DNA of 64,000 bases. Source: Macrostomum hystrix (Eukaryota; Animalia; Platyhelminthes). Position 1 is the stretch's first letter, and the number at the start of each line of letters is the position of its first letter. The notes below the pieces were generated by a model. It made no database searches. It was not told where the DNA came from and saw only the letters and a program-made list of their open reading frames with translations. The stretch is from contig CATNEN010000008.1 in NCBI GenBank assembly GCA_950097015.1, positions 2,790,001 through 2,854,000 on the forward strand, in the 5' to 3' direction. The translations under genes were made by a program, and so were the position numbers. Of this stretch, positions 18,181-47,409 are shown one piece after another.

Positions 18181-19059
18181 AAATTAGGATATGAAGCAAC
18201 CACCGCAGCTTTCCGCAATCAGAAGTGAGCTTTCAAAGTCTAGGAAACTGTAAGAAGAATTCATTTAGAAAATTTTCATATCCCATTGTATGGCGCCTCA
18301 AAATTAGTCTCCTAGCTTCGTGAGCTCAAATTTTTGCCTGAAAGCAAACTAAGACAAAAAATCCAGAGTTTTCGCTCGATATGAAAAAATATGGTAAAAA
18401 CATTCTGGCAGAATACTTTCTTTCATCGCTCGTAGAAGATTCTCTGATTGCACTTTTATTACTGTTGCTATGTTCTCGCTCTGTGCGAGGGTCCTGTGGG
18501 ATGTGTGCAGTTGCTAATTAACATTGCTTAGAGAAGCTATTCGGAGTCCTGACCCGAGCATTGCAAAACCTCCCCCTATTATTATTGCTCTGTGTTCCGT
18601 CTACAATTTTTATGAGACAACAGTTGAAATTTCGCCAATCAGGACGCTTTTTCCAAAGTTTTTCCATCTTTATTTCTTAAAAGCCATTGTTATTCTAGGA
18701 ATAAATCGTTGAATTCTGCAATCGCTCACACTTTATCAATAAATCATTTTTTCCGCGTCACAAACGCCGCCAATAATATCTTCGATAATAAATACTTGGC
18801 CAAAGTTGACTGACAGGTTGCGAACTGTTAATCCTAAAAATTGCAGGCATGCGGATTAAGGGCAAGAGAGGGATGGCTTAACTATCACAACAGTTGGTTT
18901 GTTGGTTCTGACCAATTCATATGGTGGGATCTTCATCGCGTTATTAATCCCAGGATTATCTATTCACATACTAGGTTGTCGCTCACCTCCTATTGACTTT
19001 CAGTAGTTCAAATTTCGAGATTTTTATTCGCTGGACTGCATCCAGCGATTATAAAATCC

Positions 19060-19360
19060 TCAAATCCCATTACCCTCAAATCCCATAACCCTCAAATCCC
19101 ACAACCCTCAAATCCCATAACCCTCAAATCCCATAACCCTCAAATCCGATTACCCCCAAATTCCAGAATCCTCAAATCCCATAACCCTCAAATCCCATTA
19201 CCACTAAATCCTATAATCCTCAAATCTTATAATCCTCAAACCCCATAACCCTCAAATCCCATTACCCCCAAATCCTATAATCCTCAAATCTTATAATCCT
19301 CAAACCCCATAACCCTCGAATCCCATTACCCTCAAATCCCATAACCCTCAAATCCCATAA
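19060..19360. repeat. 16-bp minisatellite (TCCCATAACCCTCAAA)
   Basis: Units start at 19081, 19097, 19113, 19129 and continue. Confidence 0.92.
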
Positions 19361-19468
19361 ACCACGATCAACCGAATCCCCACAAACAATGGACTCCCAA
19401 AATACTTTCAAATCCCACAACCCATCGAACCGTACAGACTAATCTCTCCTCATCCTCCTCTTCCTCAG

Positions 19469-22400
19469 CTCTAATCCCATTTGTTCGGGCCAACTCAGTG
19501 GTGGTGGAAGGACCGAACGACCAGACGCTGCTGGAGCGCGAGTCCGTCATCCTGCCGTGTCGGACCGAAGTTGGCTCCTCGGTTCGCGTCTTCTGGCACC
19601 GGGACGGAGTCATCGTGGCGACCCGGGATGTGCTGCTGACTGACAAACGGTATCAGTACCTGAGCGTGCCAGAGAAGGGTGAGTTTGCGAGGGGAAGGGT
19701 GAGATTCTGAAGAATGAGATTCTGAAGAGTGAGATTCTGAAAGGGTGAGATTCTGAAGGTTGAGATTCTGAAAGGGTGAGATTCTGAAGGTTGAGATTCT
19801 GAAAGGGTGAGATTCTGAAGGGTGAGATTCTGAAGGGTGAGATTCTGAAGGGTGAGATTCTGAAGGGTGAGATTCTGAAAGGGTGAGATTCTGAAGGGTG
19901 AGATTCTGAAGGGTGAGATTCTGAAGGGTGAGATTTTGAAAGGGTGGGATTCTGAAGGGTGAGATTCTGAAGGGTGAGATTCTGAAGGGTGAGATTCTGA
20001 AAGGGTGAGATTCTGAAAGGGTGAGATTCTGAAGGGTGAGATTCTGAAAGGGTGAGATTCTGAAGGGTGAGATTCTGAAGGGTGAGATTCTGAAAGGGTG
20101 AGATTCTGAAGGGTGAGATTGCGATTGGGAGGGTAAATGTGTTGGAAGGCCACAGTTATCAGGCAGGTTTTGTGCAAATCAAACCTGAATTCAAACTTCG
20201 ATTCTCATGTTATCTTTACCTCAAAGCTTCTTCTATCGATAAAGAGAAAAGAAAAACGCAAAAATCTGGAGAACTTCCAATCCGCGATGGCTGCCTCCGG
20301 GCTGAAAATCGCGATTCGCCCCCCTAGGAGCGGTGGAGACCGGACGAAAGCTTGGAATGTTTTCCAGCAGCAGCGGTGAAAGTTTCTGGTCCAAAAAAAC
20401 TTAGCCCAGTCTGGTTGAATGAAAGTCCGAGTTTCATTGAGTGACGCTGACAACTGGCCCTTTCAGGCCGCTGTCCTTCAAACCAGCCACAGGTAGTGCC
20501 AGGATAAAAACGACCCTGGAATATAGAACCAGCCCTAGCCCAGCTTCTCTTAGAAATCGTGGAAACAAAAATTACTGAAAAGTGTTGCATTTAGTGCCAC
20601 AAAATTCACACTGCGTGTGTGTGCGTGTCAGGGGTTTTAACGTGGCAGGCGTTGCGGCTGTTTCAAATTAGCCAACTTTTATTTTTACATTGATCCGTTA
20701 GCGATTGGGTAATTACGGTTGCGGGGAATTCATTTGCGCCAAATCCGATTGGAAATGAAACACAGATGTGAGCTGAAAATCAACTCGGAAAAATCTAACT
20801 ACCAGCTAGCTCAACTGCACAAGTAGTTTGCAGTGGCGCAACCAGATTTTGCCTTAGGGGGGCGGTCTTTGCGTACATTGCCCTTTGCGTGCATTGCCCT
20901 TTGCGTACATTGCCCTTTGCGTACATTGCCCTTTGCGTACATTGCCCTTTGCGTACATTGCCCTTTGCGTACATTGCCCTTTGCGTACATTGCCCTTTGC
21001 GTACATTGCCCTTTGCGTACATTGCCCTTTGCGTACATTGCCCTTTGCGTACATTGCCCCGCGGGGTCGAAGGGGGGCGGCCGCCAGGTAGAGCGCGCTC
21101 TGTTTCGCGGTTTTCGCCCACCATTCCTGGGCCAATTTCAAGGGCCGGTAGGGTAGGGCCCAGACGATTTAAAAGGTTTAAAAAATCAGAACGCACGCAG
21201 GATTATAATGAAAGCTTGAAAATTAATAAATGACCAATGGTCTTGGACTTGCTCTTTGGTCTATGTACGTTGGACTTGGGGGACAGGGAATGAGATAAGC
21301 TAATAAATTAAGAAGCGTCTTGGCTTGCCCTTTGCGTACATTGCCCCCGCGGGCCGAAGGGGGGGGCGGCCGCCACCCCCGCCCCCCCCTGGTTGCGCCA
21401 CTGGTAGTTTGTTACTTTTATCAGAAAAAATCTGACCTTGTAACATAATAATAAAAATTTTAATCGCAGGAGGGCTGCGGGCAATGGCACATCATTTGTG
21501 TGGTGACACTAGACCTGCAGCCAGCGAGGAGGCAATTCTGCCCATTTAGCGGGATCTCTTGAGTACACACGCACACAGATACTGTACAAGGCACATGCTC
21601 ACACAGGTGCGTACATCTGCTCAACTCACCCGCCACCCAAAGACCACTAGCATTATATCTAGATATAATGTTATAATGATTCTATGATTCTAAAGATATA
21701 AAGATATAATGATATAATGAAAGATATAATGATTCTAAATTAAACGATTTTAATTAGCCATCATTATCTATAAAAAATGCGACCCGGACTCGTCACAAAA
21801 TTAACCACTCTCTTACACCGACAAGCCTCACAAAGTTTCTAATTGGATACACAAATTCCTAATCCAGGAAAAAATGGCAGGTGGAAGCGGACCGTCTCCC
21901 AACCGATTGCTTTTTCCGATCGGTAATGAAATCAAGCGGATAATCTTTCCTAAGTGGTTGGCACACAGTTCATATAATTTTGGAGTATCTATTGGCTAAA
22001 ATGTATTTACTCAGTGCGTGATGTCACTGCATGCATGCTTTAGGCTAAAGAGCAATAAATGCCTGCCATTCTCTAAAACAGAAATCATTGAGGCATGAAC
22101 TAGCTTGTAATAATTGATACAAAACTATAGTTAAGACAAATAATAACTTGTTTCGCGTAAGCAAACTTTTAATGTTATGTCAATTATAAACGCCGTTTAA
22201 CTCACATTCTAACCATAGACTATGATGAATTAAACGGCATTTACCATATATGAAATTCGATTGCTTATTCTTCTGGGGCATCCCATCTGATTGATAGACA
22301 AATAGCGGTTTAGACCATTTGATTCCGACCATAGACAAAAAATAAATTTCTCACAAAGATACAGTCACGAAGCAGCCAGTCAGTCAGTGGTGGCAAAACG

Positions 22401-25208: not shown

Positions 25209-28200
25209 GCAAAAGGATGCAGAAACAGCTGCGCGATACTGTTGCGTCCCAACCTAGCCAGCGAGCCATTTCTTTGTCAGCTGCCACTGCGTGTCACACC
25301 AGGTCGGAACAGCTTCTTAGAGTCTGGAACCACCTTCTCATTTTCCTGAGGTATTTTTGTGCCAAATGTATTGTTAGCCTCACTGCCGCTTTTGCTAGAT
25401 CTTGCCTTCAAACTTCTCGGTTTCAGATAAAATTATCCAACTCCAATCTACTTTCTCTCCTTCTCCTACTCTACCTCTCCTCTCTCTCCTTCTCTCACTC
25501 GCCCTCTCCTCTCTCCTTCTCTCACTCTCCCTCTCGTCTCCTCTCTCTCCTTCTCTCACTCTCCCTCTCCTCTCTCTCCTTCTCTCCCTCTCCCTCTCCT
25601 CTCTCCTTCTCTCACTCTCCCTCTCCTCTCTCCTCTCACTCTCCCTCTCGTCTCCTCTCTCCCTTTCTCTCACTCTCCCTCTCCTCTCCCCCCTTCTCCT
25701 ACTCTACCTCTCCTCTCTCTCCTTCTCTCACTCTCCCTCTCCTCTCTCTCCTTCTCTCCCTCTCCTCTCTCCTTCTCTCACTTTCCCTCTCCTCTCTCTC
25801 CTTCTCTCCCTCTCCCTCTCCTCTCTCCTTCTCTCACTCTCCCTCTCCTCTCTCTCCTTCTCTCCCTCTCCCTCTCCTCTCTCCTTCTCTCACTCTCCCT
25901 CTCCTCTCTCCTCTCACTCTCCCTCTCGTCTCCTCTCTCCCTTTCTCTCACTCTCCCTCTCCTCTCCCCCCTTCTCTCACTCTCCCTCTCCTCTCTCCCT
26001 TTCTCTCACTCTCCCTCTCCTCTCTCTCCTTCTCTCACTCTCCCTCTCCTCTGTCCTCTCACTCTCCCTCTCGTCTCCTCTCTCCCTTTCTCTCACTCTC
26101 CCTCTCCTCTCCCTCCTTCTCTCACTCTCCCTCTCCTCTCTCCCTTTCTCTCACTCTCCCTCTCCTCTCCCTCCTTCTCTCACTCTCCCTCTCCTCTCTC
26201 CCTTTCTCGCACTCTCCCTCTCCTCTCTCTCCTTCTATCACTCTTCCTCTCGTCTCCTCTCTCTCCTTCTCTCACTCTCCCTCTCCTTCCTTTTCTACCC
26301 AGTCCGACTCTCACACCCGTGTTTTCTCCTCTCCTTCATTTTTCATTTTTGTTTTAGTTCGCTTGGATTTTCTTGACAGTGGATTTTCGTTCCAGCAGCG
26401 TCCAGTTCAGGCCTCCACTAAACTGCAGCTTTGGATCATTAAGAAAAAAACAATTTTTCTACCAATTAAAAATCGAATTCTTCATCTGTTCGCCCCTGTC
26501 CTCCATATTTCTGCGGCTTGGCCCGGGAAATGCCAAAACAGAAGAAGTCCAAAAGACGGAAATCGTAGAAGCAGCAGCAGCGGCGGCAGCAAAAATCGGA
26601 AGAAAGGGTGTCCAGTCCGTGTCGAGTCCCCGTGACAGATGGGCTCAGGTGTCCGAGCTGCTTGTTCCGCTGCCAAGAACGGCTGAGAGTTTCTAGAAAT
26701 TTCTTTTCGGCTTTGTTGTCAGCGCCGGGGGTGGCACTCGGAGTTGGGGTGGGTGACCGAGTGCAAAAGGGGAGACAAAACTATTTCCGTTAATTGGGAA
26801 ACGAATGGCAGGAGGCGCGGAGGTGGCGCCTGTGTTGACGGAACAAATAATTGCACCAGTTTCGCGTCATACTACTGAAGGGCATAATTGTCAGTAGAAA
26901 TATATGAGTTTTGCAATCTGAAAGCAGCAACTAATGCAAAAATGACTGATGATGCAATCTAATAATCGATTGGAATCTTAATCGAAAGATGAAGATGTGA
27001 TAACAGAGATATTGAGATCAGTTAACAGGTGACATTGAGATCAGTTAACAGGTGACATTGAGATCAGTTAACAGGTGACATTGAGATCAGTTTACAGGTG
27101 ACATTGAGATCAGTTAACAGGTGACATTGAGATCCGTTAACAGGTGACATTGAGATCAGTTTACAGGTGACATTGAGATCCGTTAACAGGTGACATTGAG
27201 ATCAGTTAACAGGTGACATTGAGATCAGTTAACAGGTGACATTGAGATCAGTTTACAGGTGACATTGAGATCAGTTAACAGGTGACATTGAGATCAGTTA
27301 ACAGGTGACATTGAGATCCGTTAACAGGTGACATTGAGATCCGTTAACAGGTGACATTGAGATCCGTTAACAGGTGACATTGAGATCAGTTAACAGGTGA
27401 CATTGAGATCAGTTAACAGGTGACATTGAGATCAGTTTACAGGTGACATTGAGATCAGTTAACAGGTGACATTGAGATCCGTTAACAGGTGACATTGAGA
27501 TCAGTTTACAGGTGACATTGAGATCCGTTAACAGGTGACATTGAGATCAGTTAACAGGTGACATTGAGATCAGTTAACAGGTGACATTGAGATCAGTTTA
27601 CAGGTGACATTGAGATCAGTTAACAGGTGACATTGAGATCCGTTAACAGGTGACATTGAGATCAGTTAACAGGTGACATTGAGATCCGTTAACAGGTGAC
27701 ATTGAGATCAGTTTACAGGTGACATTGAGATCCGTTAACAGGTGACATTGAGATCAGTTAACAGGTGACATTGAGATCAGTTAACACGTGACATTGAGAT
27801 CAGTTTACAGGTGACATTGAGATCAGTTAACAGGTGACATTGAGATCAGTTAACAGGTGACATTGAGATCCGTTAACAGGTGACATTGAGATCAGTTAAC
27901 AGGTGACATTGAGATCCGTTAACAGGTGACATTGAGATCCGTTAACAGGTGACATTGAGATCAGTTAACAGGTGACATTAAGATCAGTTAACAGGTGACA
28001 TTGAGATCCGTTAACAGGTGACATTGAGATCAGTTTACAGGTGACATTGAGATCCGTTAACAGGTGACATTGAGATCAGTTAACAGGTGACATTGAGATC
28101 AGTTAACACGTGACATTGAGATCAGTTTACAGGTGACATTGAGATCAGTTAACAGGTGACATTGAGATCAGTTAACAGGTGACATTGAGATCCGTTAACA

Positions 28201-31200
28201 GGTGACATTGAGATCAGTTAACAGGTGACATTGAGATCCGTTAACAGGTGACATTGAGATCAGTTAACAGGTGACATTGAGATCAGTTAACAGGTGACAT
28301 TGAGATCAGTTTACAGGTGACATTGAGATCAGTTAACAGGTGACATTGAGATCCGTTAACAGGTGACATTGAGATCAGTTTACAGGTGACATTGAGATCC
28401 GTTAACAGGTGACATTGAGATCAGTTAACAGGTGACATTGAGATCAGTTAACAGGTGACATTGAGATCAGTTTACAGGTGACATTGAGATCAGTTAACAG
28501 GTGACATTGAGATCCGTTAACAGGTGACATTGAGATCAGTTAACAGGTGACATTGAGATCCGTTAACAGGTGACATTGAGATCAGTTTACAGGTGACATT
28601 GAGATCCGTTAACAGGTGACATTGAGATCAGTTAACAGGTGACATTGAGATCAGTTAACAGGTGACATTGAGATCAGTTTACAGGTGACATTGAGATCAG
28701 TTAACAGGTGACATTGAGATCAGTTAACAGGTGACATTGAGATCCGTTAACAGGTGACATTGAGATCAGTTAACAGGTGACATTGAGATCCGTTAACAGG
28801 TGACATTGAGATCCGTTAACAGGTGACATTGAGATCAGTTAACAGGTGACATTAAGATCAGTTAACAGGTGACATTGAGATCCGTTAACAGGTGACATTG
28901 AGATCAGTTAACAGGTGACATTGAGATCAGTTAACAGGTGACATTGAGATCAGTTAACAGGTGACATTGAGATCAGTTAACAGGTGACATTGAGATCCGT
29001 TAACAGGTGACATTGAGATCAGTTTACAGGTGACATTGAGATCAGTTTACAGGTGACATTGAGATCAGTTAACAGGTGACATTGAGATCAGTTTACAGGT
29101 GACATTGAGATCAGTTAACAGGTGACATTGAGATCAGTTTACAGGTGACATTGAGATCAGTTAACAGGTGACATTGAGATCAGTTAACAGGTGACATTGA
29201 GATCAGTTTACAGGTGACATTGAGATCAGTTTACAGGTGACATTGAGATCAGTTAACATGTGACATTGAGATCAGTTAACAGGTGACATTGAGATCAGTT
29301 AACAGGTGACATTGAGATCAGTTAACAGGTGACATTGAGATCAGTTAACAGGTGACATTGAGATCAGTTTACAGGTGACATTGAGATCAGTTAACAGGTG
29401 ACATTGAGATCAGTTAACAGGTGACATTGAGATCAGTTAACAGGTGACATTGAGATCCGTTAACAGGTGACATTGAGATCAGTTAACAGGTGACATTGAG
29501 ATCAGTTAACAGGTGACATTGAGATCCGTTAACAGGTGACATTGAGATCAGTTAACCGTCGAAGACTCAATGCAAGCATATTGTTTGCAAATTCGACTCT
29601 CAGGCATCCACGACCTGAAGATCGAGGACCTGCAAATCGACGACCAGGGCGAATACACCTGCCAGGTGTCCAAGGTCGGGCCAGGCGGCAGCGGCCGGCC
29701 GGCTGCCACCGTGAAGGCATTCCTGCGAGTGCTGAAGAATCTGAACCGGTTGGAGCTGATGCAGCGAGTGAACGCCACCTCGGCGAAGCTGGAGGCCCGC
29801 AGTTTGACGCAGCCGTTTCGGCTGCCAGCTGGCCAGTCCGGGGAGCTCGTCTGTGTGGCCGCGGGTTCGAATCCGGCCGCCTCAGTCAGCTGGTCATTCA
29901 GTGGAGGCGTGGTGGTGCCAGTGCCAGCTTATTCAAAGCAGCAAGAGAAGCGCAGCTTTGATCGCCCAGTCAAAGGCACCACCTGGATGGAGAAGCTGGA
30001 GCTCAAGAACAAGCTGTGAGCATAACTTCGATCAATTTAAATTAGATGGTACCTAGTGATTGGATTTTTTCACTCTCTCTCCCGCAGTACAACAGTGCAG
30101 TCGGTTCTCAAACTGGATGGCCAATCGGTGACCGACGCCAAGCAAAACTTGCTAATTGAATGCCACGCCCAGGTGTCTAGCTATGAGCTAAAGCCATTTT
30201 CAATTTCCACGCGTCTCTACGTGACAGTGCCGCCAACTGTTAGTCTGGCTATCGAACCGCAAAGGCCGCATAATGAGTATCACGAGCACGACACTGTGAC
30301 AGCGGTGTGCACTGCTACTGGCCGGCCGGACAACTTTGTGTACACGTAAATAAAAAATTTAATAGGCTCATGACTAAAAATAGAACATTAAAGAGGAATC
30401 TCGGATGACAGAGGGTGGGCCGGGTGCAGTATCTAAAAATAGAACATTAAAGAGGAATCTCGGATGACAGAGGGCGGGCCGGGTGCAGTATCTAAAAATA
30501 GAACATTAACGAGGAATCTCGGATGACAGAGGGCGGGCCGGGTGCGGTATCTAAAAATAGAACATTAACGAGGAATCTCGGATGACAGAGGGCGGGCCGG
30601 GTGCAGTATCTAAAAATAGAACATTAACGAGGAATCTCGGATGACAGAGGGCGGGCCGGGTGCAGTATCTAAAAATAGAACATTAACGAGGAATCTCGGA
30701 TGACAGAGGGCGGGCCGGGTGCAGTATCTAAAAATAGAACATTAACGAGGAATCTCGGATGACAGAGGGCGGGCCGGGTGCAGTATCTAAAAATAGAACA
30801 TTAACGAGGAATCTCGGATGACAGAGGGCGGGCCGGGTGCAGTATCTAAAAATAGAACATTAACGAGGAATCTCGGATGACAGAGGGCGGGCCGGGTGCA
30901 GTATCTAAAAATAGAACATTAACGAGGAATCTCGGATGACAGAGGGCGGGCCGGGTGCAGTATCTAAAAATAGAACATTAACGCGGAGGTTGGGTGGGGA
31001 GACAAAATCTGAGGGTGAGGGGGGTGAAAAACGTTCAGTATCTAAAAATATAACAGTTTTTATACGTTTGTTCATCAAGAGGGTGAGAAGTCTGAGGGAG
31101 AGATTTTTTGCCAGCCAATAAGTAGCTGGAGGGAGTGGGTAGGCTGAACTTTCATGACCTTAGATGACAGCCAATCAGAAAGCAAAAGTAGATGGCGAAG

Positions 31201-34200
31201 ATTACTTAAGTTTATGAAGCACGTATAAAATGTCTGCATAACTCGGTCCCAAACAGTTGGTCGATTGACTCGAACGGAGCCGTTCTTCCGCCTTCGGCGC
31301 CGACAGCGTCCCGTCTGACCCTGACGCTGAATCGCAAGCATCACGGCCGCACCCTTCGCTGCACGGTGGCTAATCACGCCAAATCGAATGCGACGGCACA
31401 GCTGCGCGTCCGCTACGGTCCGAAATTCGCGCCCTCGCTTCCGGCTCTCTACGCGGCCAGGGTCGGCGGTCTGGCGGATTTGTCGTGCGCCGCCGACGCA
31501 AATCCGGAGCCGATCTACGCGTGGAGGAGAGCGCCCGCCGCTGTTGCAGCCGGCCTAATCGGCATGGACAGCGGCCCGGTGGTCGGTCAGATGTCACACA
31601 TGCGCATGACTAATCTTAAACCTGACGATTTCGGCGAGTACATCTGCACAGTCAGCGGGGCTGAGTTCTCGTCAATCTCTAGGCGAGTTCTTCTAGCCCA
31701 GATGGCGCGCCCGAGATGCGAGTCAGCTAGCCAGCAATTCGCCAGAATTGGACGGAACTTTAGGCTGGAGTGCCGGGTAGTGTCCGTGCCTGGACCCAGC
31801 AGCGATGGAGGCCTGCTCTGGTATCGCAACGGACGCAAGCTGGAGTCTGGGAACCGGTGAGTCTGGGAACTGGGAACCGGTGAGTCTAGGAACTGGGAAC
31901 CGGTGAGTCTGGGAACCGGTGAGACTGGGAACTGGGAACCGGTGAGTCTGGGAACCGGTGAGACTGGGAACCGGTGAGTCTGGGAACTGGGAACCGGTGA
32001 GTCTGGGAACTGGGAACCGGTGAGTCTGGGAACTGGGAACCGGTTAGTCTGGGAACTGGGAACCGGTTAGTCTGGGAACTGGGAACCGGTGAGTCTGGGA
32101 ACCGGTGAGTCTGGGAACCGGTGAGTCTGGGAACTGGGAACCGGTGAGTCTGGGAACTGGGAACCGGTGAGTCTGGGAACTGGGAACCGGTGAGTCTGGG
32201 AACTGGGAACCGGTGAGTCTGGGAACTGGGAACCGGTGAGTCTGGGAACTGGGAACCGGTGAGTCTGGGAACTGGGAACCGGTGAGTCTGGGAACTGGGA
32301 ACCGGTGAGTCTGGGAACTGGGAACCGGTGAGTCTGGGAACTGGGAACCGGTGAGTCTGGGAACTGGGAACCGGTGAGTCTGGGAACTGGGAACCGGTGA
32401 GTCTGGGAACTGGGAACCGGTGAGTCTGGGAACTGGGAACCGGTGAGTCTGGGAACTGGGAACCGGTGAGTCTGGGAACTGGGAACCGGTGAGTCTGGGA
32501 ACTGGGAACCGGTGAGTCTGGGAACTGGGAACCGGTGAGTCTGGGAACTGGGAACCGGTGAGTCTGGGAACTGGGAACCGGTGAGTCTGGGAACTGGGAA
32601 CCGGTGAGTCTGGGAACTGGGAACCGGTGAGTCTGGGAACTGGGAACCGGTGAGTCTGGGAACTGGGAACCGGTGAGTCTGGGAACTGGGAACCGGTGAG
32701 TCTGGGAACTGGGAACCGGTGAGTCTGGGAACCGGTGAGTCTGGGAACTGGGAACCGGTGGGTCTGGGAACTGGGAACCGGTTAGTCTGGGAACTGGGAA
32801 CCGGTGAGTCTGGGAACTGGGAACCGGTGAGTCTGGGAACTGGGAACCGGTGAGTCTGGGAACTGGGAACCGGTGAGTCTGGGAACCGGTGAGTCTGGGA
32901 ACCGGTGAGTCTGGGAACCGGTGAGTCTGGGAACCGGTGAGTCTGGGAACCGGTGAGTCTGGGAACTGGGAACCGGTGAGTCTGGGAACTGGGAACCGGT
33001 GAGTCTGGGAACTGGGAACCGGTGAGTCTGGGAACTGGGAACCGGTGAGTCTGGGAACTGGGAACCGGTGAGTCTGGGAACTGGGAACCGGTGAGTCTGG
33101 GAACTGTGAACTGTGAATATTAGAAACACGCGAGTCATTCAAAGCCCTTGAAGCCATTACAAAGATCCAGCGCAGTGCAGCAGTTTTGCCTCTACTCACT
33201 CATTCAGGCTTCGGGTCTACCAAGAGGACTTCCTTGGCGGCACAACTGCCTACGTCCACTTTGAGGAAGTTGCGTCTGACGATTTCGGAATTTACAACTG
33301 CACCGCCAAGAATGAAATGGGAAGCGACAGCCTGCTAATTAGCCTCACTATCGAAGGTGAGGCTGGAAAAGTTTTTGCACAAAATGAAAACAAAACACAG
33401 AAGCGACTGAAAGTAGAGTAGAAAGCGCATTATATTTTCTACAAAAAGCTTTGAAATTTTATCCATGTGAGAGCGATTCGACCCAAATTGATCCCTCAGA
33501 CAATATCCCGGTTGCCTTTATCGCTGGCGCCTCAACAGCCCTAGTGATGGTGCTGGTGTTCATGCTGGTGCTGCTCTGCGTCTGCCGCAAGGGCTACTGG
33601 GACAGTCGGGCAGCCGCCGATCAGCGCAACATGAGTGAGTGGGGATTGGCTTCAAACAACTGTGTCTAACAGGTGAACAGTGGTGTCTAACAGGTGAACA
33701 GTGGTGTCTAACAGGTGAACAGTGGTGTCTAACAGGTGAAAAACGGTGTCTAACAGGTGAACAGTGGTGTCTAACAGGTGAACAGAGGTGTCTAACAGGT
33801 GAACAGTGGTGTCTAACAGGTGAACAGTGGTGTCTAACAGGTGAACAGTGGTGTCTAACAGGAGTACAATTGTGTCTAACAGGTGAACAGTGATGTCTAA
33901 CAGGTGAACAGTGGTGTCTAACAGGTGAACAGTGGTGTCTAACAGGTGAACAGTGGTGTCTAACAGGAGTACAATTGTGTCTAACAGGTAAAAGTTGAAA
34001 AGCGGTGTCTAACAGGAGAACCGTGGTGTCTAACAGTAGAACAGTGGTTTCTAACAGGTGAACAGTGGTGCCTAACAGGTGAACTGTGGTATCGAACAGG
34101 TGAACAGTGGTGTCTAACAGGAGTACAGTTGTGTCTAACAGGTAAAAGTTGAAAAGCGGTGTCTAACAGGAGAACCGTGGTGTCTAACAGTAGAACAGTG

Positions 34201-35555
34201 GTTTCTAACAGGTGAACAGTGGTGCCTAACAGGTGAACTGTGGTATCGAACAGGTGAGATTCCAGCATTTAGTCGATCATCGTCAACCTTTAACCCACAT
34301 CTCAGAGAAGCAGCAGTCAAGTCGGCTGCCGCCTGATCATCTGGATGTTGAACCTCCTGACTCCGATGATGACAACAATGGCATCAGTGGAGGCCAGATT
34401 AGCAACGGTTGTCGGCGCCCTCGACTTCAGCATCAGCATCAGCAGCAGCAGCCAGCGGCCTCCTCGCTGCGAAGACGCTACGGTGATCCATGCGGCGATG
34501 ACGCACTAACCGTCGAGGTCGCGCCAAGCGACATCGGCCTGGCCGGGGGCGGCGGCGGCGGCTACCCGGCGTTCGTCGGCTGCGCCGTCCACGGCAGTCT
34601 GGGCCGGCAGCCGCTCTCACCGCCGCAGCTGCCTGCCGCCAGCCTTGCCGGGCCTCATCAGAGGGGGTATCAGCGACCGGCGTCGGCTTATCCCGGCATC
34701 GACTTGTCCGACCTGACGCCGAGTCAGCAGAACTGCCTGGGCCAGGTTCTGTCGCCAGCGAGACGATCGCAGCCGCAGCAGCTTCAGCAGGCCGCGGCGG
34801 CGGCGGAGGAGCCGGCTGAGGAGGCCGGGCAGGAGGAGTGAGCGATTGGGATTCTTGATTGTGTTAGGGATCTCTAAATGGGAAGAGAGATATTCCCATT
34901 TAACAGAAAGAAAATGGTCGGCTAGATGATCATTACCAATGTGATTACGAAATCGACGTCAATTCCAAGTGAGAATTAGGTGCAGTTATGATGATTGCCA
35001 AGATCCCCACCGTCGGGATAATGATTGTTAATATCCCCACCTCCGTCGGGATGATGATTGCCTAGCATCCCCACCCTCGGGATGATGATTGCCAAGATCC
35101 CCACCGTCGGAAGGATGATTGCTAATATCCCTACTTCCGTCGGGATGATGATTGCCAGCATGGCCTTCGCTTCCTCAACTATGGCGCCAATGCCCCCCAC
35201 CCGTTGCAGCAGCGTCAGGAGCTGCGACTCAGGCTACGGCGGCGCTCAGGCGGCAGCACAGCTGGGCCATCACCCGGCCAACCAGCTGGGCTCCTCCGAT
35301 TCCAGCGTCGACTCGAAGCTCAGCGGCGGACATCAGCATCATGTGACCTTTCATCCGACTCCGTGCGTCATTCACCACTACCCCGGTGCCTCGCTGCCGA
35401 AAACCGGCTGCCCGATTCACAGCATTCCGCACGGACTAGCCGCTGCCGCGGCCGGGGGCACCGTCGGGATGATGATGGGCGGCGCCGGCGCCGGTGGGGG
35501 CATTATTCGAAGGCAGCCAACTATCGATGAAGACCAGCCCACAACTGAGGTGTAG
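19469..35555 (+). CDS. KIRREL: KIRREL/NEPH1 (Kirre/Rst/SYG-1)-like cell-adhesion protein: 5 Ig domains, TM helix, long cytoplasmic tail ending in class I PDZ motif TTEV; signal-peptide exon not located
   Basis: Exons 19469-19678, 29604-30015, 30088-30345, 31257-31856, 33208-33356, 33500-33634, 34306(or 34273)-34837, 35210(or 35159/35066)-35555. All are GT-AG and phase-consistent. Ig signatures: LPC..VFWHRDG..DLKI..DDQGEYTCQV; ELVCVAAGSNPAASVSW; TLRCTVAN; DDFGEYICTV; DDFGIYNCTAKNEMGSD. TM: IPVAFIAGASTALVMVLVFMLVLLCVC. Five Ig domains and no FN3 argue for NEPH/KIRREL rather than nephrin. Confidence 0.85.
19695..20118. repeat. 15/16-bp minisatellite (GGGTGAGATTCTGAA[A]) starting just after the 19678 donor
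   Basis: Direct periodicity; the unit resembles the junction AAGG|GTGAG. Confidence 0.95.
20831..21403. mobile_element. hAT-type MITE (573 bp) with internal 16-bp tandem array
   Basis: Perfect 15-bp TIR CAGTGGCGCAACCAG (20831-20845) / CTGGTTGCGCCACTG (21389-21403). 8-bp TSD GTAGTTTG (20823-20830 and 21404-21411). (CCCTTTGCGTACATTG)n at about 20870-21058. No coding capacity. Confidence 0.93.
21445..21621 (-). mobile_element. tRNA-derived SINE, 5'-truncated copy
   Basis: Reverse complement of the 10073-10250 body, including the tail. Confidence 0.82.
23622..24864. repeat. 23-bp minisatellite (TCTGAAGTACTGTCTACTTCCAA and variants), ~54 copies
   Basis: 23-nt periodicity; homogeneous on the left, mixed variants on the right. 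Confidence 0.96.
25450..26295. repeat. CT-rich low-complexity tract
   Basis: Almost exclusively C/T; gives stop-free Leu/Ser/Pro ORFs. Confidence 0.92.
27011..29556. repeat. 23-bp minisatellite (ATTGAGATCAGTTAACAGGTGAC), ~110 copies, ending 47 nt before the 29604 exon
   Basis: 23-nt periodicity; each unit carries AACAG|GTGA. Confidence 0.97.
30373..30983. repeat. 59-bp minisatellite, ~10 copies, intronic
   Basis: TCTAAAAATAGAAC at 30432, 30491, 30550 and onward. Confidence 0.96.
31843..33105. repeat. 16/23-bp minisatellite (GAGTCTGGGAACCGGT / GAGTCTGGGAACTGGGAACCGGT) beginning inside the exon and repeating its donor site
   Basis: The last 14 exonic nt plus GT form one 16-mer unit. Confidence 0.97.
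33664..34256. repeat. 21-bp minisatellite (TCTAACAGGTGAACAGTGGTG), ~28 copies, intronic
   Basis: 21-nt periodicity. Confidence 0.95.
34988..35158. repeat. Short degenerate 30/33-bp repeat (ATGATGATTGCCAAGATCCCCACCGTCGGG), ~5 copies, at the last intron/exon boundary
   Basis: Repeated ATGATTG..ATCCCCAC..CGTCGGG units. Confidence 0.85.
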
Positions 35556-35565
35556 CTGACAAAAC

Positions 35566-35666
35566 GGATTGCTAGTCTATCCCATGGGTGAAGGAACAGA
35601 ATGGATTGCTAGTCTATCCCATGGGTGAAGGAACAGAATGGATTGCTAGTCTATCCCATAGGTGAA
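35566..35666 (+). repeat. 37-bp repeat (GGATTGCTAGTCTATCCCATGGGTGAAGGAACAGAAT), ~2.7 copies, 10 nt after the KIRREL stop
   Basis: Units start at 35566, 35603 and 35640. Confidence 0.93.
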
Positions 35667-38812: not shown

Positions 38813-41800
38813 TCAGCAGGTACCGCAGCCGCCGCCGCCGCCCCCTCCTCCTGGATGGCCCACGCTGGCTCTTTTGCTGCGCTTAATCGGCAGCTGACTC
38901 TTGTCCATAGACAGCTCAATGCGCAGCATCACCAGGTCCAACAGCTTGTCAATGGCCGGCTTAACATTCTCACCTGTGCAGGCGCTAGTCTCCAGGTAGG
39001 GCATGCTTGATGAATCAGTTGAGAGATGAATGCGGGTTAAGGATTAAATCCTTAGGGCGATTTAGTTAAGATTCCTAAACGTGATCTAGAGATCCCTAAA
39101 AAAGATCTACAGAACCGAAATTTGATCTAGAGATCCCTAAATAAAAGTGATCTAGAGATCCCTAAATAAAAGTGATCTAGAGATCCCTAAATAAAAGTGA
39201 TCTAGAGATTCCTAAATAAAAGTGATCTAGAGATCCCTAAATAAAAGTGATCTAGAGATCCCTAAAAGTGATCTACAGATCCCTATATAAACGTGATCTA
39301 GAGATCCCTAAAAAAGATCTACAGAACCGAAATTTGATCTAGAGATCCCTAAATAAAAGTGATCTAGAGATTCCTAAAAAAAAGTGATCTAGAGATCCCT
39401 AAAAGTGATCTACAGATCCCTATATAAACGTGATCTAGAGATCCCTATATAAACGTGATCTAGAGATCCCTAAAAAAGAGATCTAAAGATTCCTAAAAGT
39501 AAAGATTTCAAGTGAATTTAGGTTTTCCTACAAATATTGATCCTGAGATACTTTTAACTGATCGATGTGTTTTGTGCAGATCAATAAACTCAAACTTTCG
39601 ATATCCTTAAATTGATATCTAGGGATCGATATATTGTATCCATCTTAAGATCCCTAAAAAGCTCACTTGAGATCGTCAGCCAGTCGCTGGGCCCGCTCGC
39701 AGGTGACGGCCCGCTGGTCGGTCAGATCTTTCTTGTTGCCAACCAGCACAATGTCCGGCCTGTCACAATAGGCATTGGTCTGGAGCAGGCTGAGCCAGTT
39801 TCGAATGTCCAGAAAACTCTGCTCAGAAGTCAGGTCAAACACAAGTAGGAAGCCCATGGCGTCGCGAAAGAAGGCCGTGCTCAGCGAACGGAAGCGCTCC
39901 TGGCCCGCAGTGTCCCTGGGAGCGAATTCGCATGGGATTTCTAGACTAAACACATGGGAGAAGCAATCCCACACACCTGAGAAGCCATCTCACACACCTG
40001 AGAAGCCATCTCACACACCTGAGAAGCCATCTCACACACCTGAGAAGACATCTCACACACCTGAGAAGCCATCTCACACACCTGAGAAGCCATCTCACAC
40101 ACCTGAGAAGCCATCTCACACACCTGAGAAGCCATCTCACACACCTGAGAAGCCATCTGTGACGTTAACTTTTCTTTGTACCACCCCATGGGGTCGGTGC
40201 TATAAATAGATGTGCGTAGTGCTGAGAGGCCGTGCGTTTTTTGGACCTCCGTGGCTCAACCTGGAGCTTGTGAATCGTGTCCCTCATTCTTACTTGATTA
40301 AAAGAATGCTACATGGTGGCAGCGGTGCGGGCTCTAACCACCCGTACAACTTGCGCTCTAAAGACGGAGCGCCTGGTGAAGACTCTGAAGACACTACTGA
40401 AGAAGCCAGCGGAGTGCCGGAGCCGGTTTCACTGGAGGGCGCGAATCTAATGGAAACCATGAAGGTGCTTCTGACGCCCCAGAGTCGGCAACTTCAGGAA
40501 TTGACTCGCGCGCAAGAGAGACAGTCAGCGTTCTACATGGATCAACTGGCGCGTCAGCAGGCGGAGTTCACGAGGCTGCTTGCCGAAGCCAAGCCACGGC
40601 CTCCAGCGGCGGAACCCAAGCTATTTAAGCTGACGGACTCTGATGAAATCGAAGCATTCCTGATGACCTTCGAGAGGACTGCCGCATCGTGTGGATGGCA
40701 AAAGTCGGAGTGGACGATCCGGCTGGCACCGCTCTTGACAGGCGTCGCGCAGAGTGCATTCCACAGTCTGACGACAGCTGCGAGCGCGGACTACGACCTG
40801 GCGAAGGCGACTATCCTAGCGAGGTACAACATCGGCGAGGAGACCTACCGACAGCGATTCCGGTCTCTGCGGAAGTCACCCGAAGAGACCTTCCAGGCGT
40901 TTGCAACGAAGCTGGAAGACCTGTTTGACCGGTGGATGACAGCTGGACTGGACGAGGACCAAAGAGAGGCGCTGTTAGGAGATGACCCCATCGTCAAGCA
41001 GAAAGTGCTCCTGGAGCAGTTTACAGAGTCTGTGACAAGGGGACTGCAAGTGTGGATGCGAGAGAGAAAGCCGAAGAACATCAAATAGGCTGCGAGTCTG
41101 GCCGATGACTATGCAATGGCAAGGAACAACGACAAGACCGGTGGAACACCAGGACACCCGAACCAGGAGACTGCGGAAGGGGCTACTGTACCCAATGCTA
41201 TCGCCCGACAAAGGACAGTTCAACGACCGCAAAGTCTCAAGCCTCCGATCAGCTGCTTCAATTGTGGAGGCCCCCACAAGAAGTTTCAGTGTCCCAACAA
41301 GCCTTCTAATGTCCACCTGGCCTCAGAAGCAAGAGCTATGGAGGGGGCCTCGGACAGGTTCATCACCGGACAGGCAGACGGCATGGAATTGCGATTCCTG
41401 TTGGACACAGGAGCAGATCGAACCACGATCCGACGCAGCTGCCTGCCTGAGCACATCAATTGGACAGGACACCACGCACTATTGCGCTGCTTTGGGGGCG
41501 ACCTACACCGCCTTCCTATCGCTAAAGTGGAACTGCACCTAAACGGCTACACAGGAACTACCGAAGTCTGCGTGTCCGACTCACTCCCAGTAAGCGCTTT
41601 GGCTGGACTGGATGTGATTAGCCGACTCCAGCCAGGGGTTGGAGGCACCCCTAGCACAGGAGCCGGAGGAGAGGCGCGCGAGGGGGCTAAAGGCCTACCC
41701 CTCCCAGCCAATGAGAGAGAGGGGGTGGGTGCGCCACACCACCCAAAACCCCAGTTAAAGGGGGACGAGAGACTTCACGTGGAAGGCATTGTGGCCAGCG

Positions 41801-44800
41801 GCCTAAACCAGATCGATCCGGAACCGGCTAATAAAGCAAAACCGAGAATGACTAGAGCGCAGGTGCGTAAACATCAGCGAGAGTACAACAAGGCTAAACA
41901 GGAAACAGCAGTGCGCCCCGTGGCATTAGATTACCAGGCAGCCCTACTAGACGACAGTGAGCTTTAGGCGGCAGTACAAACCGGCGCATTGATAGCAGAA
42001 AGCAACGGCAGATTGTATCGACGTCAAGCAGTCGGCGAGGACCAACTGGTGCTTCCGAGAGCTCTGCATGCTACGGCGCTGTCTCAGGCCCATGAGAGTG
42101 CGTTCGCTGGGCACCTGGGAAGAAAAAAAACCTATCAACGATTGGAACAGCGATTCTGGTGGCCGACAATGACCAAGGACGTGAAGGACTTCGTAGCAAC
42201 GTGCGACAAGTGCCAGAAGACGGCCCGAATCCCGAGCAACCACCGGGTGAAGCTTGTGCAAGTGCCTGGAGTGGAGGAGGTCTTTACTAAAGTTGTCATC
42301 GACATCAGCGGGCCGTATCCAAGGACGGCGAGCGGTCACCAGTACATCCTGTCGGTTATCGATGCGGCTACTCGGTTTCCAGAAGGATTCCCACTGCGCA
42401 AGATCGACGCGGAGTCTGTGGCCAAGGCATTGATGGACTGCTTCGTGAGGACCGGCTTCCCGAAGGAGATCCAGAGCGACAGAGGCACTAACTTCTCCTC
42501 GGCACTGTTGCAAGCCCTGTACCGGTGCACCGGAGTTGAAGGCATCCAGTCGACACCGTACCACCCGCAAAGCCAGGCGCTGGTGGAGAGGTTCCACGGC
42601 ACGCTCAAGACTATGTTGAGGCGGCTGCCAGCTCGCGAGAAAAAGAGGTGGGACCAGTACCTGCCTTATTTACTGTTTGCCATCCGAGAGGTGCCTAACG
42701 AGACAACTGGTTTCTCCCCTTTCGAACTGTTGTATGGACAGACCGTACGAGGACCGCTAGACTTGCTGCGACAGACCTGGGACGAGCAACTCACCGAAGA
42801 GAAGAAAGACATCATCTCCTTCGTGCTGGCCCAGAGAGATCGGCTGCGTGCCGGTCAGGAAGCAGCACGAGGCAACGAAGACGTAGCCCGAAAGCGCCAA
42901 AAGCTCTGGTACGACCGGAAGTCGCGGGAACGAGAGCTGAAGCCCGGGGATCAGGTGCTGCTGCTGTTGCCATCGACGGCCAAGAAGCTCCACGCTGAAT
43001 GGCGCGGCCCCTATGAAGTACTGGAGAAGTGCGGCGACGTGAACTACCGGATCCGGATTGGCACGGCAACCAACACGTTCCACATCAATCTGCTCAAGAA
43101 ATACAACGAGCGAGAGTCGATTCTGATGCAGCTGTCAGCAGTAACGCCGGTTGCTCCTGCGCTCTCCGACCGTCTGAGCCCGGACGAGAGGGACCGTCTC
43201 CAGCAACTGGTGCAGGGCTTCGCGAACGTCTTCAGTGAGATGCCGGGTAGGACCGACCTGGTGGAGCACCGAATCCGGACGACATCTGACCGTGTTGTGC
43301 GCATCCGGCCGCGACGGGAGCCGCAGGCACATCGACAGGTGCTCCAAGAGGAGATCCAACGCATGCTGGATCTCGGAGTGATCGAACCGTCGGACAGTGA
43401 CTACTGCTCCCCGGTTTGTCTAGTGGCCAAGAAGGACGGCTCGGTCCGATTCACGGTCAACTTCAAGGCGTTGAATGAGCTGGTGGCTTTCGATTCCTAC
43501 CCAATGAAGAACATCGAGGATCTGCTGGAGCGAGTCGCCAAGGCCAAGTTCATATCCAAGCTAGATTGCTGCAAGGGCTACTGGCAGATTCCTCTGTCCG
43601 AGAACTCGAAGCGGCTGACGGCATTCGCGGCCGGTGGCAAGCTCTACCAATTCACCGTAATGCCCATGGGCTTAAACTGCAGCAGCGCAACGTACCAGAG
43701 GCTCATGGACAAGATGTTCCAAGGACTGGGCAACGCAGACTCATACGTCGACGACATCGCCGTGTTCAGCGAGACCTACGAGCAGCACGTCCACGACCTG
43801 AGGGAGGTGTTAGGACGCCTCCAGGCTGCCGGTCTGACGGTGCAGCCACGCAAATGCTACCTGGGCGGCAACTCGGCGGACTACCTCGGCTTCAAGCTCG
43901 GCGGAGGCCAGATCGGCACGAGCGAGGATCGAGTGCGGACTATCACGGCACTGGCTCGACCCCAGACCAAGGCCCAGCTGCGATCAGTGCTCGGAGTGCT
44001 CAATCACTACCGTCGGTTCGTGCCCGGCTACTCCGACAAGGTGGCAGCCCTGACTGACCTCACGAAGAAGTCGGCGCCCGAGGACCTAAGAGCGGCCTGG
44101 GGAGATCAACAGACTCGAGCCTTCGAGACAGTAAAGTCTCTGCTGGCGAGCGAGCCGGTACTACGCGCGCCGGATTACAGTCGGCCATTCATTCTGGAGA
44201 CGGACAGCTCGGAGACCGGTATCGGTGCGGTGTTAACGCAAGAGTTCGAGGACGGCCACCATCCGGTGCTATTCGTATCGCGGCGTCTGACTTCGGCGGA
44301 GCGGAGCTATGCGACGATCGAGAAGGAGTGCCTCGCGGTGCGCTGGGCGGTCGAGAAACTGCGCCACTACCTGCTCGGCCGCCGGTTCGTTATCAAGTCC
44401 GACCACAAGCCACTGCAGTACCTGCAGATGGACCACACCAACCCGCGGCTCCAACGTTGGGCCTTCTATCTGTCTGGCTACGACTACGAGATCCGGTACC
44501 AGCCAGGCAGAAGCAATGCGGTGGCCGACGGTCTCAGCCGCATCTGGACTGATTGATTGACCAAATGATTTACTGACTGACTCAGGATTGAGTGACTGTC
44601 CACGTGATTTATTGTACCAGACGGCTCAGTAACTGATTTTGCATTGCTGCTGGTTTAATCGATTTTGCAGTGCCGTAGGATCGATTGATTTGTAGTGTCG
44701 TAGTTTACGCGATTTTGCGTTGCCGATTTAAATTTAAGTTTTGCTGTTTCCTGCGATTCAATTCTGACCTGAAATTTGATCCGGCTTCGTTCTTGTGGTG

Positions 44801-47228: not shown

Positions 47229-47409
47229 CATGGGATAGACTAGTAATCCATTCGGTTACTTCACCCATTGCATAGACTAGCAATCCATTATGTTCCTTCA
47301 CCCATTGCATAGACCAGCAATTCATTCTGTTCCTTCACCCATGGGATAGACTAGCAATCCATTCGGTTACTTCACCCATGGGATAGACTAGCAATCCATT
47401 ATGTTCCTT
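47229..47409 (-). repeat. 37-bp repeat of the same family as 35566-35666, ~4.8 copies, 3 nt after the Bora stop
   Basis: Reverse complement of GGATTGCTAGTCTATCCCATGGGTGAAG(G/T)AAC..AAT. Confidence 0.93.

What the first reader, a model, noticed from the sequence alone, without database searches (positions are those of the whole stretch)
31843..33105. Exon end and donor site amplified into about 55-60 tandem consensus 5' splice sites
Seen: the last 14 coding nt of the Ig4/5 exon (GAGTCTGGGAACCG, codons E-S-G-N-R) plus GT are exactly one repeat unit, and nearly every unit has the strong donor CCG|GTGAGT. Only the first donor gives the in-frame join to the Ig5 exon. Any later donor reads CGG-TGA and stops before the TM helix. 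Inference: this is either a natural test of proximal donor selection, or a repeat-length-tunable switch yielding NMD substrates or a secreted KIRREL ectodomain. It is the clearest case of a pattern seen at several junctions in this window (3013-3592, 5316, 19695, 35158): minisatellites seeded from splice junctions.
Basis: partly seen in the sequence, partly recalled or inferred. Interest (0 to 1): 0.78.

Follow-up and report, generated by a model that had tools for sequence, protein, structure and literature searches.

The report
Splice-donor minisatellite in flatworm intron
A 1.26-kb tandem repeat inside an intron of a flatworm cell-adhesion gene began by copying the exon's last 14 bases plus its splice donor, leaving 58 near-identical donors in a row; assembled transcripts use only the first, as in a few known human genes (F7, IFI6, CBS), so it is a striking but not new kind of feature.

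Summary
At 31847-33111 there are 57 head-to-tail units: 46 of 23 nt and 11 of 16 nt. They give 58 CCG|GT sites, 52 of them perfect CCG|GTGAGT. The first site is the real donor of an Ig-domain exon, and that exon's last 14 nt equal the 16-nt unit. Reading past it gives AAC-CGG-TGA, a stop.

Spliced RNA contigs from two samples run through the exon to 31856/7 and continue directly into the exon at 33208. That join is exactly colinear with the closest orthologue (Macrostomum lignano, ETGDR|VRIY against ESGNR|LRVY). The exon end is therefore ancestral coding sequence and the repeat was seeded from it.

No assembled transcript uses a later donor, although contigs cannot show rare forms. A length-tunable switch or a secreted isoform has no support; the truncated product would end in the middle of Ig5.

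This kind of feature is published. The human F7 IVS7, IFI6, CBS, LMNB2 and PDGFA minisatellites span an exon-intron boundary, and only or mostly the most upstream site is used (PMC1557585).

In this window every intron over 150 nt carries a private minisatellite, which fills most of it in three of the five short ones. First readers of this scan noted similar arrays elsewhere in this genome.

The parts
31257..31856 (+). Exon encoding Ig4 and the first half of Ig5 of a Kirrel/Neph-like IgSF protein. It ends ...NGRKLESGN + CG, the first two bases of a split Arg codon.
   Evidence: RNA joint 30345^31257 and contigs up to 31857; Pfam Ig_3/I-set; 69% identity to M. lignano P0002 residues 262-421
31843..31856 (+). 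The last 14 exonic nt (GAGTCTGGGAACCG), identical to the matching part of the 16-nt repeat unit. This is the progenitor copy of the array.
   Evidence: 18-nt exact match of the junction to the unit; the best match to any other array in the window is 7
31854..31862 (+). Authentic 5' splice site CCG|GTGAGT, cut at 31856|31857. It is the first of 58 reiterated sites.
   Evidence: Contigs of runs X1 and X2 leave the window at 31857 and continue with the first 30 nt of the exon at 33209
31858..31860 (+). In-frame TGA, read if the first donor is skipped. Any use of a later donor gives a premature stop.
   Evidence: The ORF 31366-31860 ends here; sequence
31847..33111 (+). Minisatellite of 57 units (46 x 23 nt, 11 x 16 nt). 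It holds 57 downstream pseudo-donors, 51 of them perfect CCG|GTGAGT.
   Evidence: 53-nt cyclic contigs of the 23-nt repeat are present in RNA runs X1-X3
33091..33096 (+). The last GTGAGT copy. Splicing from here would give a 117-nt intron, the size of the array-free introns in this gene.
   Evidence: array-free introns of 72 nt and 143 nt
33112..33207 (+). Unique 96-nt intron tail with the acceptor ...TCATTCAG|. The array decays here into CTGTGAA heptamers.
33208..33356 (+). Exon for the second half of Ig5 (G completes the Arg codon, then LRVYQEDF...YNCTAKNEMGS...LTIE).
   Evidence: Pfam I-set positions 55-90; translation; 82% identity to P0002 residues 423-471; loose-end letters of the RNA contigs
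33500..33634 (+). Transmembrane exon (DNIPVAFIAGASTALVMVLVFMLVLLCVCRKG...), downstream of the premature stop.
   Evidence: tblastn match to P0002 residues 472-515, 93% identity; sequence
19694..20120 (+). A second junction-derived array in the same gene. Its 15-nt unit GAAGGGTGAGATTCT (~28 copies) starts 16 nt after the RNA-supported donor 19678|19679 and shares the exact 10-mer GAAGGGTGAG with that junction.
   Evidence: loose end before 29603; the best match to any other array is 8

Best explanation
This is a neutral or slightly costly intronic minisatellite born from the exon-intron junction itself. The ancestral sequence read GAGT-CTGGGAACCG|GT-GAGT, so the 4-nt GAGT stood 16 nt apart on either side of the cut site. 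Slippage or unequal exchange between these copies duplicated the 16-mer made of the exon's last 14 nt plus GT (inferred). A later internal duplication of CTGGGAA produced a 23-nt unit that spread and homogenised, giving 57 units and turning an intron of about 117-130 nt into one of 1351 nt (inferred). Because each duplicate lies downstream of the original donor, the coding sequence is untouched as long as the spliceosome uses the first site. Assembled mRNA shows that it does (shown at contig level). The choice cannot come from the site or its near context, since the sites are identical for 10-14 nt upstream and for everything downstream. It must therefore come from position: the first site is the one next to the exon and is transcribed first. 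This matches the 5'-to-3' 'most upstream site wins' behaviour shown experimentally for the human F7 IVS7 minisatellite. Any transcript spliced from a later donor carries the in-frame TGA at 31858-31860 and would be a nonsense-mediated-decay substrate (inferred). The array is one instance of a habit visible across this window: minimal introns inflated by private minisatellites.
For: Array anatomy is. Searches show that the first-donor join is gap-free and colinear with the M. lignano orthologue: N159 aligns to residue 421, the split CG|G codon is R422, and L1 of the next exon aligns to residue 423. Paralogues keep the same spacing, so the exon end predates the array. In one search, spliced contigs of runs X1 (281 nt) and X2 (218 nt) run from the exon to 31857 and continue with CTTCGGGTCTACCAAGAGG..., the exon at 33209. 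Other GT..AG joints in the same runs show that they are RNA. These contigs carry SNPs against the window, so they come from other individuals or alleles and are independent of the assembly. One search shows arrays covering 39.6% of the window. From: all six introns over 150 nt hold arrays; the first array starts -10, +16, +22, +28 and +29 nt from the donor in five of them, and the last array ends 45-48 nt before the acceptor in four. The two array-free introns are 72 and 143 nt, and the last donor copy would give 117 nt. A rough count of viable 16-nt seeds in such an intron puts about one in four across the donor, close to the 2 (perhaps 3) of 6 seen. The published precedent with mutational proof is PMC1557585.
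Against: Contigs show the dominant form only, so minor use of donors 2, 3 and onward, as happens in human IFI6 and CBS, would be invisible, more so if NMD removes the products. Both junction-bridging contigs come from a haplotype that differs from the window at 4-5 positions in the last 116 nt of the exon; that this haplotype carries the array is likely, since repeat contigs are present in the same runs, but not shown. The reference-like haplotype (X3) has no contig across the junction. Repeat contigs are present in the RNA runs; they are most simply intronic RNA, because the purely intronic array at 27011-29556 shows the same, but this is not proven. In-vitro and HeLa work with two strong identical sites finds the opposite rule, that the intron-proximal site wins at 45 nt or more apart (PMC3413131), so first-site use is not a foregone conclusion. 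Six of the seven substitution-bearing units are hit in the donor hexamer, a hint that later donors are not entirely free of cost.
Confidence: 0.8

Rival explanations
1. The array is a regulated or length-tunable alternative 5' splice-site switch. A fraction of transcripts uses later donors and yields NMD substrates, lowering expression in proportion to copy number, or a truncated secreted ectodomain.
For: There are 51 perfect downstream donors. An in-frame TGA follows immediately. Repeat-derived contigs are present in RNA runs. In human IFI6 and CBS the two pseudo-sites nearest the authentic donor are used. The excess of donor-killing substitutions among variant units suggests that later sites are sometimes seen by the spliceosome.
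Against: No contig joins a later donor to 33208, and the bridging contigs pass the branch point unbroken. The truncated protein would end in the middle of Ig5 without the second cysteine, so it would not be a well-formed ectodomain. The same kind of array is found in unrelated introns of this window, which speaks for a mutational habit rather than gene-specific regulation. An intronic array with no donor role gives the same RNA signal.
Confidence: 0.08
2. The array works as a platform of U1 snRNP binding sites. It would reinforce the authentic donor, protect the lengthened intron from premature cleavage and polyadenylation, or hold the pre-mRNA at chromatin. Donor-like units would then be favoured by selection.
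For: There are 52 near-consensus U1 sites at 16-23 nt spacing. Four of the nine intronic arrays of this gene carry G|GTGA-type motifs on the sense strand. Units can pair through the ACCGGU palindrome, and the first 290 nt fold with z = -3.3.
Against: There is no direct evidence. Most arrays in the window have no strong donor: only this one has many sites matching 7 of 8 consensus positions. Sense-strand donor motifs are expected anyway if units are copied from junction-proximal sequence. The fold z-score is what a repeat with a palindromic core gives.
Confidence: 0.07
3. The array, or its length, is an assembly artefact.
For: Highly homogeneous arrays are hard to assemble, and I could not lay reads across this one.
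Against: Independent RNA runs contain 53-nt cyclic contigs of the 23-nt period at this place. The array has ordered internal variants and two unit lengths. The flanks are unique and carry the correct splice sites.
Confidence: 0.03

Closest known systems
Human F7 intron 7 (IVS7) 37-bp VNTR (Borensztajn et al. 2006, PMC1557585)
   Same: An intronic minisatellite whose first monomer spans the exon-intron boundary, so the authentic donor is followed by identical pseudo-donors. Only the most upstream site is used, and later sites are functional but silent.
   Different: F7 has 5-9 copies of 37 bp that include only 4 exonic nt, with a weak site (UGG|gugggu). Here there are 57 units of 16 or 23 nt that include 14 exonic nt (10 in the 23-nt form), with a near-consensus site CCG|GUGAGU. 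That is the class of strong site that did begin to compete in the F7 constructs. The host is a flatworm, and no mutational test has been done.
Human IFI6 (6-16) intron 2, CBS intron 13, LMNB2 and PDGFA intron 4 minisatellites (as listed in PMC1557585)
   Same: The splice donor is reiterated by a junction-spanning minisatellite: 25 pseudo-sites in IFI6, 15-20 repeats in CBS.
   Different: The copy number here is about twice the largest of these.
Duplicated strong 5' splice sites in model pre-mRNAs (Eperon laboratory; Hodson et al. 2012, PMC3413131)
   Same: Identical strong U1-binding sites compete for a single 3' splice site.
   Different: In those constructs the intron-proximal (downstream) site wins almost completely at separations of 45 nt or more, and preferences are mixed below about 30 nt. 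Here the spacing is 16-23 nt and the intron-distal (first) site is the one found in mRNA.

Membership tests
Junction-spanning intronic minisatellite with reiterated 5' pseudo-splice sites (F7 IVS7 / IFI6 / CBS type) | A tandem array of 10-100-nt units lying in an intron | tested here: met
   TRF period 23, 54 copies, 31847-33111; it lies within intron 31857-33207, which is defined by RNA contigs
Junction-spanning intronic minisatellite with reiterated 5' pseudo-splice sites (F7 IVS7 / IFI6 / CBS type) | The first monomer spans the exon-intron boundary | tested here: met
   Exon nt 31843-56 plus GT equal the 16-nt unit
Junction-spanning intronic minisatellite with reiterated 5' pseudo-splice sites (F7 IVS7 / IFI6 / CBS type) | The authentic donor sequence is repeated identically downstream | tested here: met
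   51 further perfect CCG|GTGAGT sites and 6 degenerate ones
Junction-spanning intronic minisatellite with reiterated 5' pseudo-splice sites (F7 IVS7 / IFI6 / CBS type) | The most upstream site is the one used in mature mRNA | tested here: met
   Contigs of two RNA runs join 31856 to 33208, and the join is colinear with the orthologue. This is contig-level evidence only, so minor forms are not excluded.
Junction-spanning intronic minisatellite with reiterated 5' pseudo-splice sites (F7 IVS7 / IFI6 / CBS type) | Copy-number polymorphism (VNTR) | not testable with these tools
Regulated alternative 5' splice site coupled to NMD | Detectable transcripts from the alternative donor(s) | tested here: not met
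The test is weak, because contigs drop rare forms.
Kirrel / Neph / IrreC-type IgSF adhesion protein (the host gene) | Five extracellular Ig domains, one TM helix and a cytoplasmic tail ending in a PDZ-binding motif | tested here: inconclusive
   Ig and C2-set_2 hits are spread over the exons. There is a hydrophobic TM exon, and the last exon ends TTEV. The closest proteins carry automatic UniRef names: Nephrin and KIRREL1 (and Dscam2 for one longer member) in P0002's cluster, Dscam2-like and 'Ig-like domain-containing' for P0038 and P0091. The exon's PDB hits are generic IgSF proteins, none of them KIRREL.

The most novel reading that the evidence does not exclude
In this flatworm, minisatellites may be nucleated at 5' splice sites genome-wide by a process tied to splicing or transcription, rather than merely tolerated there. 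The resulting banks of consensus U1 sites would then be used: later donors would fire at a low rate that depends on array length, giving heritable, fast-mutating tuning of mRNA output through NMD. The genome would then hold hundreds of natural constructs for working out the rule of 5' splice-site choice.
Probability: 0.1. Interest if true: 0.75.

Novelty: new member of a known kind. Interest (0 to 1): 0.42.

Why it matters
How the spliceosome picks one of several equally good 5' splice sites is still argued. Model substrates favour the site nearest the 3' splice site, whereas the F7 minisatellite favours the first. Here nature has placed 58 near-consensus sites 16-23 nt apart, and the first is the one found in mRNA. 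This extends the 'most upstream wins' behaviour to a lophotrochozoan, to strong sites, and to twice the copy number known before. If such arrays are as common in this genome as the scan's unchecked notes suggest, they offer many replicates for a rule that has so far been tested on a handful of human genes. For annotation the practical point is that gene predictors must take the first donor and must not read the repeats as coding. One M. lignano model already ends in a translated minisatellite.

Tried and rejected
I therefore laid the left part only, as the tool suggested, so joints across the array appear as loose ends rather than as joints.
- The four runs offered are kept as contigs, which gives no quantification. 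The tool warns against using depth, so I give no usage percentages.
- Orthologous genomic DNA could not be had. The look-up of encoding contigs has no record for the M. lignano proteins P0002, P0151 or P0091, so I could not ask whether relatives carry an array at this junction.
- The PDB sequence search with the exon gives only generic IgSF hits, so it does not settle the Kirrel assignment.
- The 437-aa minus-strand ORF at 31886-33199 is a stop-free translation of the repeat, not a gene.
The homologue's ...EEAGQE-D-SVRSCDSGYGG places the intron at 34838-35209, and the array at 34988-35161 lies inside it.
- The arrays at 3005-3592 and 5326 onward have no exon evidence nearby.
- RNA folding of the start of the array shows pairing between units, but nothing that sets the first donor apart.
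- Full-text searches found no paper on donor-anchored minisatellites in flatworms.
Exons were handled one by one, by reference.

Full report
**What is there.** The stretch 31847-33111 is a clean minisatellite (period 23, 54 copies). Parsing it at every CCGGT gives 58 sites, with donor G positions from 31857 to 33091. These bound 57 units: 46 of 23 nt (GTGAGT-CTGGGAA-CTGGGAA-CCG) and 11 of 16 nt (GTGAGT-CTGGGAA-CCG). Forty of the 23-mers and ten of the 16-mers are identical. Fifty-two sites read CCG|GTGAGT, and these are the only copies of that 9-mer in the 64-kb window. Six are degenerate: GTTAGT three times, GTGAGA twice, GTGGGT once. Because the exon copy is of that form, it is the older one, and the 23-nt form arose by an internal 7-nt duplication and then took over (inference). 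The 3' end decays into CTGTGAA heptamers, followed by 96 nt of unique intron and the acceptor.

**The gene.** Exons were examined one at a time by reference. I did not build or search a joined (spliced) protein.
- Exon 31257-31856 carries Ig_3/I-set signatures, and 33208-33356 matches the C-terminal half of I-set.
- The best single-stretch matches in the 1.8-billion-protein library are Macrostomum lignano proteins. P0002 and a shorter member of its cluster carry the automatic UniRef names Nephrin and KIRREL1; P0038 and P0091 are named Dscam2-like and "Ig-like domain-containing". P0002 is 69% identical over the first exon and 82% over the second. The window is therefore from a macrostomid-like flatworm.
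- tblastn, RNA joints and homology give this model on the + strand: about 19469-19678, 29604-30015, 30088-30345, 31257-31856, 33208-33356, 33500-33634 (TM), 34306-34837 and 35210-35552, ending TTEV.
- The PDB search returns only generic IgSF hits, so "Kirrel-like" rests on architecture and on those names.

**Which came first.** The exon's last full codon (N159) aligns with residue 421 of P0002, and the next exon's first residue aligns with residue 423. The split codon CG|G supplies R422: ESGNR|LRVY against ETGDR|VRIY, with no gap. More distant paralogues keep the same spacing. The exon end is therefore ancestral coding sequence, and the array copied it rather than the reverse. The junction reads GAGT...(12 nt)...GAGT, a 4-nt direct repeat at exactly the 16-nt period, which is the obvious substrate for the first slippage (inference).

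**Which donor is used.** Only four runs were offered, from one study and kept as contigs.
- The runs are RNA: they show GT..AG joints at 30015^30088 and 30345^31257.
- In X1 a 281-nt contig, and in X2 a 218-nt contig, follow the exon to 31857. They then continue for 165 and 148 letters beginning CTTCGGGTCTACCAAGAGGACTTCC, which is the exon at 33209. The G at 31857 equals the G at 33208, so the cut is 31856|31857 joined to 33208. The first of the 58 donors is the one in assembled mRNA.
- These contigs differ from the window at 31761, 31764, 31793 and 31802 (two synonymous changes, plus G>A and S>N in a variable loop), whereas about 1 kb upstream is identical. They therefore come from another haplotype and are independent of the assembly. 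It follows that the array's presence on that haplotype is inferred, from repeat contigs in the same runs, and not shown.
- 53-nt cyclic contigs of the 23-nt repeat occur in X1-X3. The purely intronic array at 27011-29556 gives the same kind of contig, so intronic RNA is the simplest source.
- Contigs cannot exclude rare use of later donors.

**Consequence of later donors.** Reading through the first site gives AAC CGG TGA. The stop lies upstream of three further exon junctions, so such transcripts are expected to be NMD targets (inference from the general rule). The protein would end after the C' strand of Ig5, lacking the YNC cysteine encoded in the next exon. A functional secreted ectodomain is therefore unlikely.

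**Context in the window.** Arrays cover 39.6% of the window. Among the eight introns I could define (seven in this gene, plus the Rab27 intron on the minus strand), the two without arrays are 72 and 143 nt.

| Donor | Nearest array starts (nt from cut site) | Last array ends before acceptor (nt) |
|---|---|---|
| 19678 (9.9-kb intron, seven arrays) | +16 | 47 |
| 30345 | +29 | 269 |
| 31856 | -10 | 96 |
| 33634 | +28 | 48 |
| 34837 | +151 | 48 |
| Rab27, 45186 (minus strand) | about +22 (array split by an LTR element) | about 45 |

The last donor copy here would give a 117-nt intron. The picture is of minimal introns whose free space, between the donor and the last ~45 nt that holds the branch site and pyrimidine tract, has been blown up by a private minisatellite. 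Under that view, a 16-nt seed in an intron of about 120 nt spans the donor in roughly one case in four (rough estimate). Observed: 2 clear cases of 6. The second is 19694-20120, whose unit shares the exact 10-mer GAAGGGTGAG with the RNA-supported junction, while the best match of that junction to any other array is 8. The Rab27 array is a possible third: CTCTGG|GTGAGC against the unit's CTCAGG(TGT)GTGAG. No special nucleating mechanism is needed, though none is excluded.

The M. lignano homologue P0091 reads ...EEAGQE-D-SVRSCDSGYGG, which places the intron at 34838-35209 with the array inside it. For 3005-3592 and 5326 I found no exon evidence.

**Comparison with what is known.** Borensztajn et al. 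2006 (PMC1557585) describe exactly this arrangement in human F7 intron 7: a 37-bp unit in 5-9 copies, whose first monomer spans the boundary. With 50 constructs they show that the pseudo-sites are functional but that only the most upstream site is chosen. They also list IFI6 (25 pseudo-sites, the two nearest also used), CBS, LMNB2 and PDGFA. In contrast, model substrates with two strong identical sites use the intron-proximal site almost exclusively at 45 nt or more apart, with mixed use below about 30 nt (PMC3413131). The present array has 16-23-nt spacing, near-consensus sites and 58 copies, with the first one used. It is a new and extreme member of the F7 kind, in a flatworm. M. lignano is reported to be 15% simple and tandem repeats (PMC5730564). 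I found no paper on donor-anchored minisatellites in flatworms.

**Earlier notes of this scan.** On other pieces of this genome, first readers repeatedly noted donor-anchored minisatellites. One follow-up called them common in this flatworm genome. These are unchecked AI notes. They agree with what I see in this window but are not independent evidence.

**Verdict.** Seeding from the junction is supported, and the first donor is the one used in assembled mRNA. A regulatory switch is unsupported. The feature is a new member of a known kind and of moderate interest, mainly as a natural experiment on 5' splice-site choice.

Noticed in passing
window 39913-45186 (minus strand): The Rab27 intron between ...HLQLW and DTAGQERF holds a 21-nt minisatellite (44962-45161 and 39958-40158). 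It has been split by a 4.8-kb insertion with identical 156-nt terminal direct repeats (40158-40313 and 44806-44961), i.e. an LTR element that landed inside the array.
   Followed up: partly
window 45130-45190 (minus strand): The Rab27 donor CTCTGG|GTGAGC is followed after about 21 nt by units CTTCTCAGGTGTGTGAGATGG. These resemble the junction if a 3-nt gap is allowed, so this may be a third junction-derived array.
   Followed up: partly
window 31880-32803: Of the seven array units that carry a substitution, six are hit within the 6-nt donor hexamer (GTTAGT x3, GTGAGA x2, GTGGGT x1), where 26% would be expected by length. Counted by units the binomial P is 0.002; counted as 3 of 4 events it is 0.06, because neighbouring units may share one event. 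This is a hint of weak selection against later donors.
   Followed up: partly
window 31761-31802: RNA contigs of two samples carry four SNPs within 42 nt just upstream of the array (two of them non-synonymous), while about 1 kb of upstream exons is identical to the window. Diversity appears locally raised next to the minisatellite.
   Followed up: no
window 35559-35666 and 47229-47400: Two 37-nt-unit arrays are reverse complements of each other, 11.6 kb apart. They bracket the end of the Kirrel-like gene's neighbourhood, the LTR element and the Rab27 exons. This could be an inverted duplication or the ends of a large element.
   Followed up: no
window 27011-29556 and 33662-34257: Two arrays in different introns of the same gene share the 10-mer TAACAGGTGA, a donor-like CAG|GTGA. 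A common origin or convergence was not examined.
   Followed up: no
protein P0091 (M. lignano), residues ~1085-1165: The predicted protein ends in about eight tandem copies of SGVPNRRLYL. This looks like a gene model that ran into an intronic or 3' minisatellite, the kind of annotation error such arrays cause.
   Followed up: no
window 19058-19483: The 16-nt array CCTCAAATCCCATAAC lies upstream of the exon that starts at about 19469. It resembles that exon's first 12 nt (CTCTAATCCCAT, 11 of 12 matches), with a degenerate copy at about 19409 in between. It may be an acceptor-side counterpart, but the evidence is weak.
   Followed up: partly
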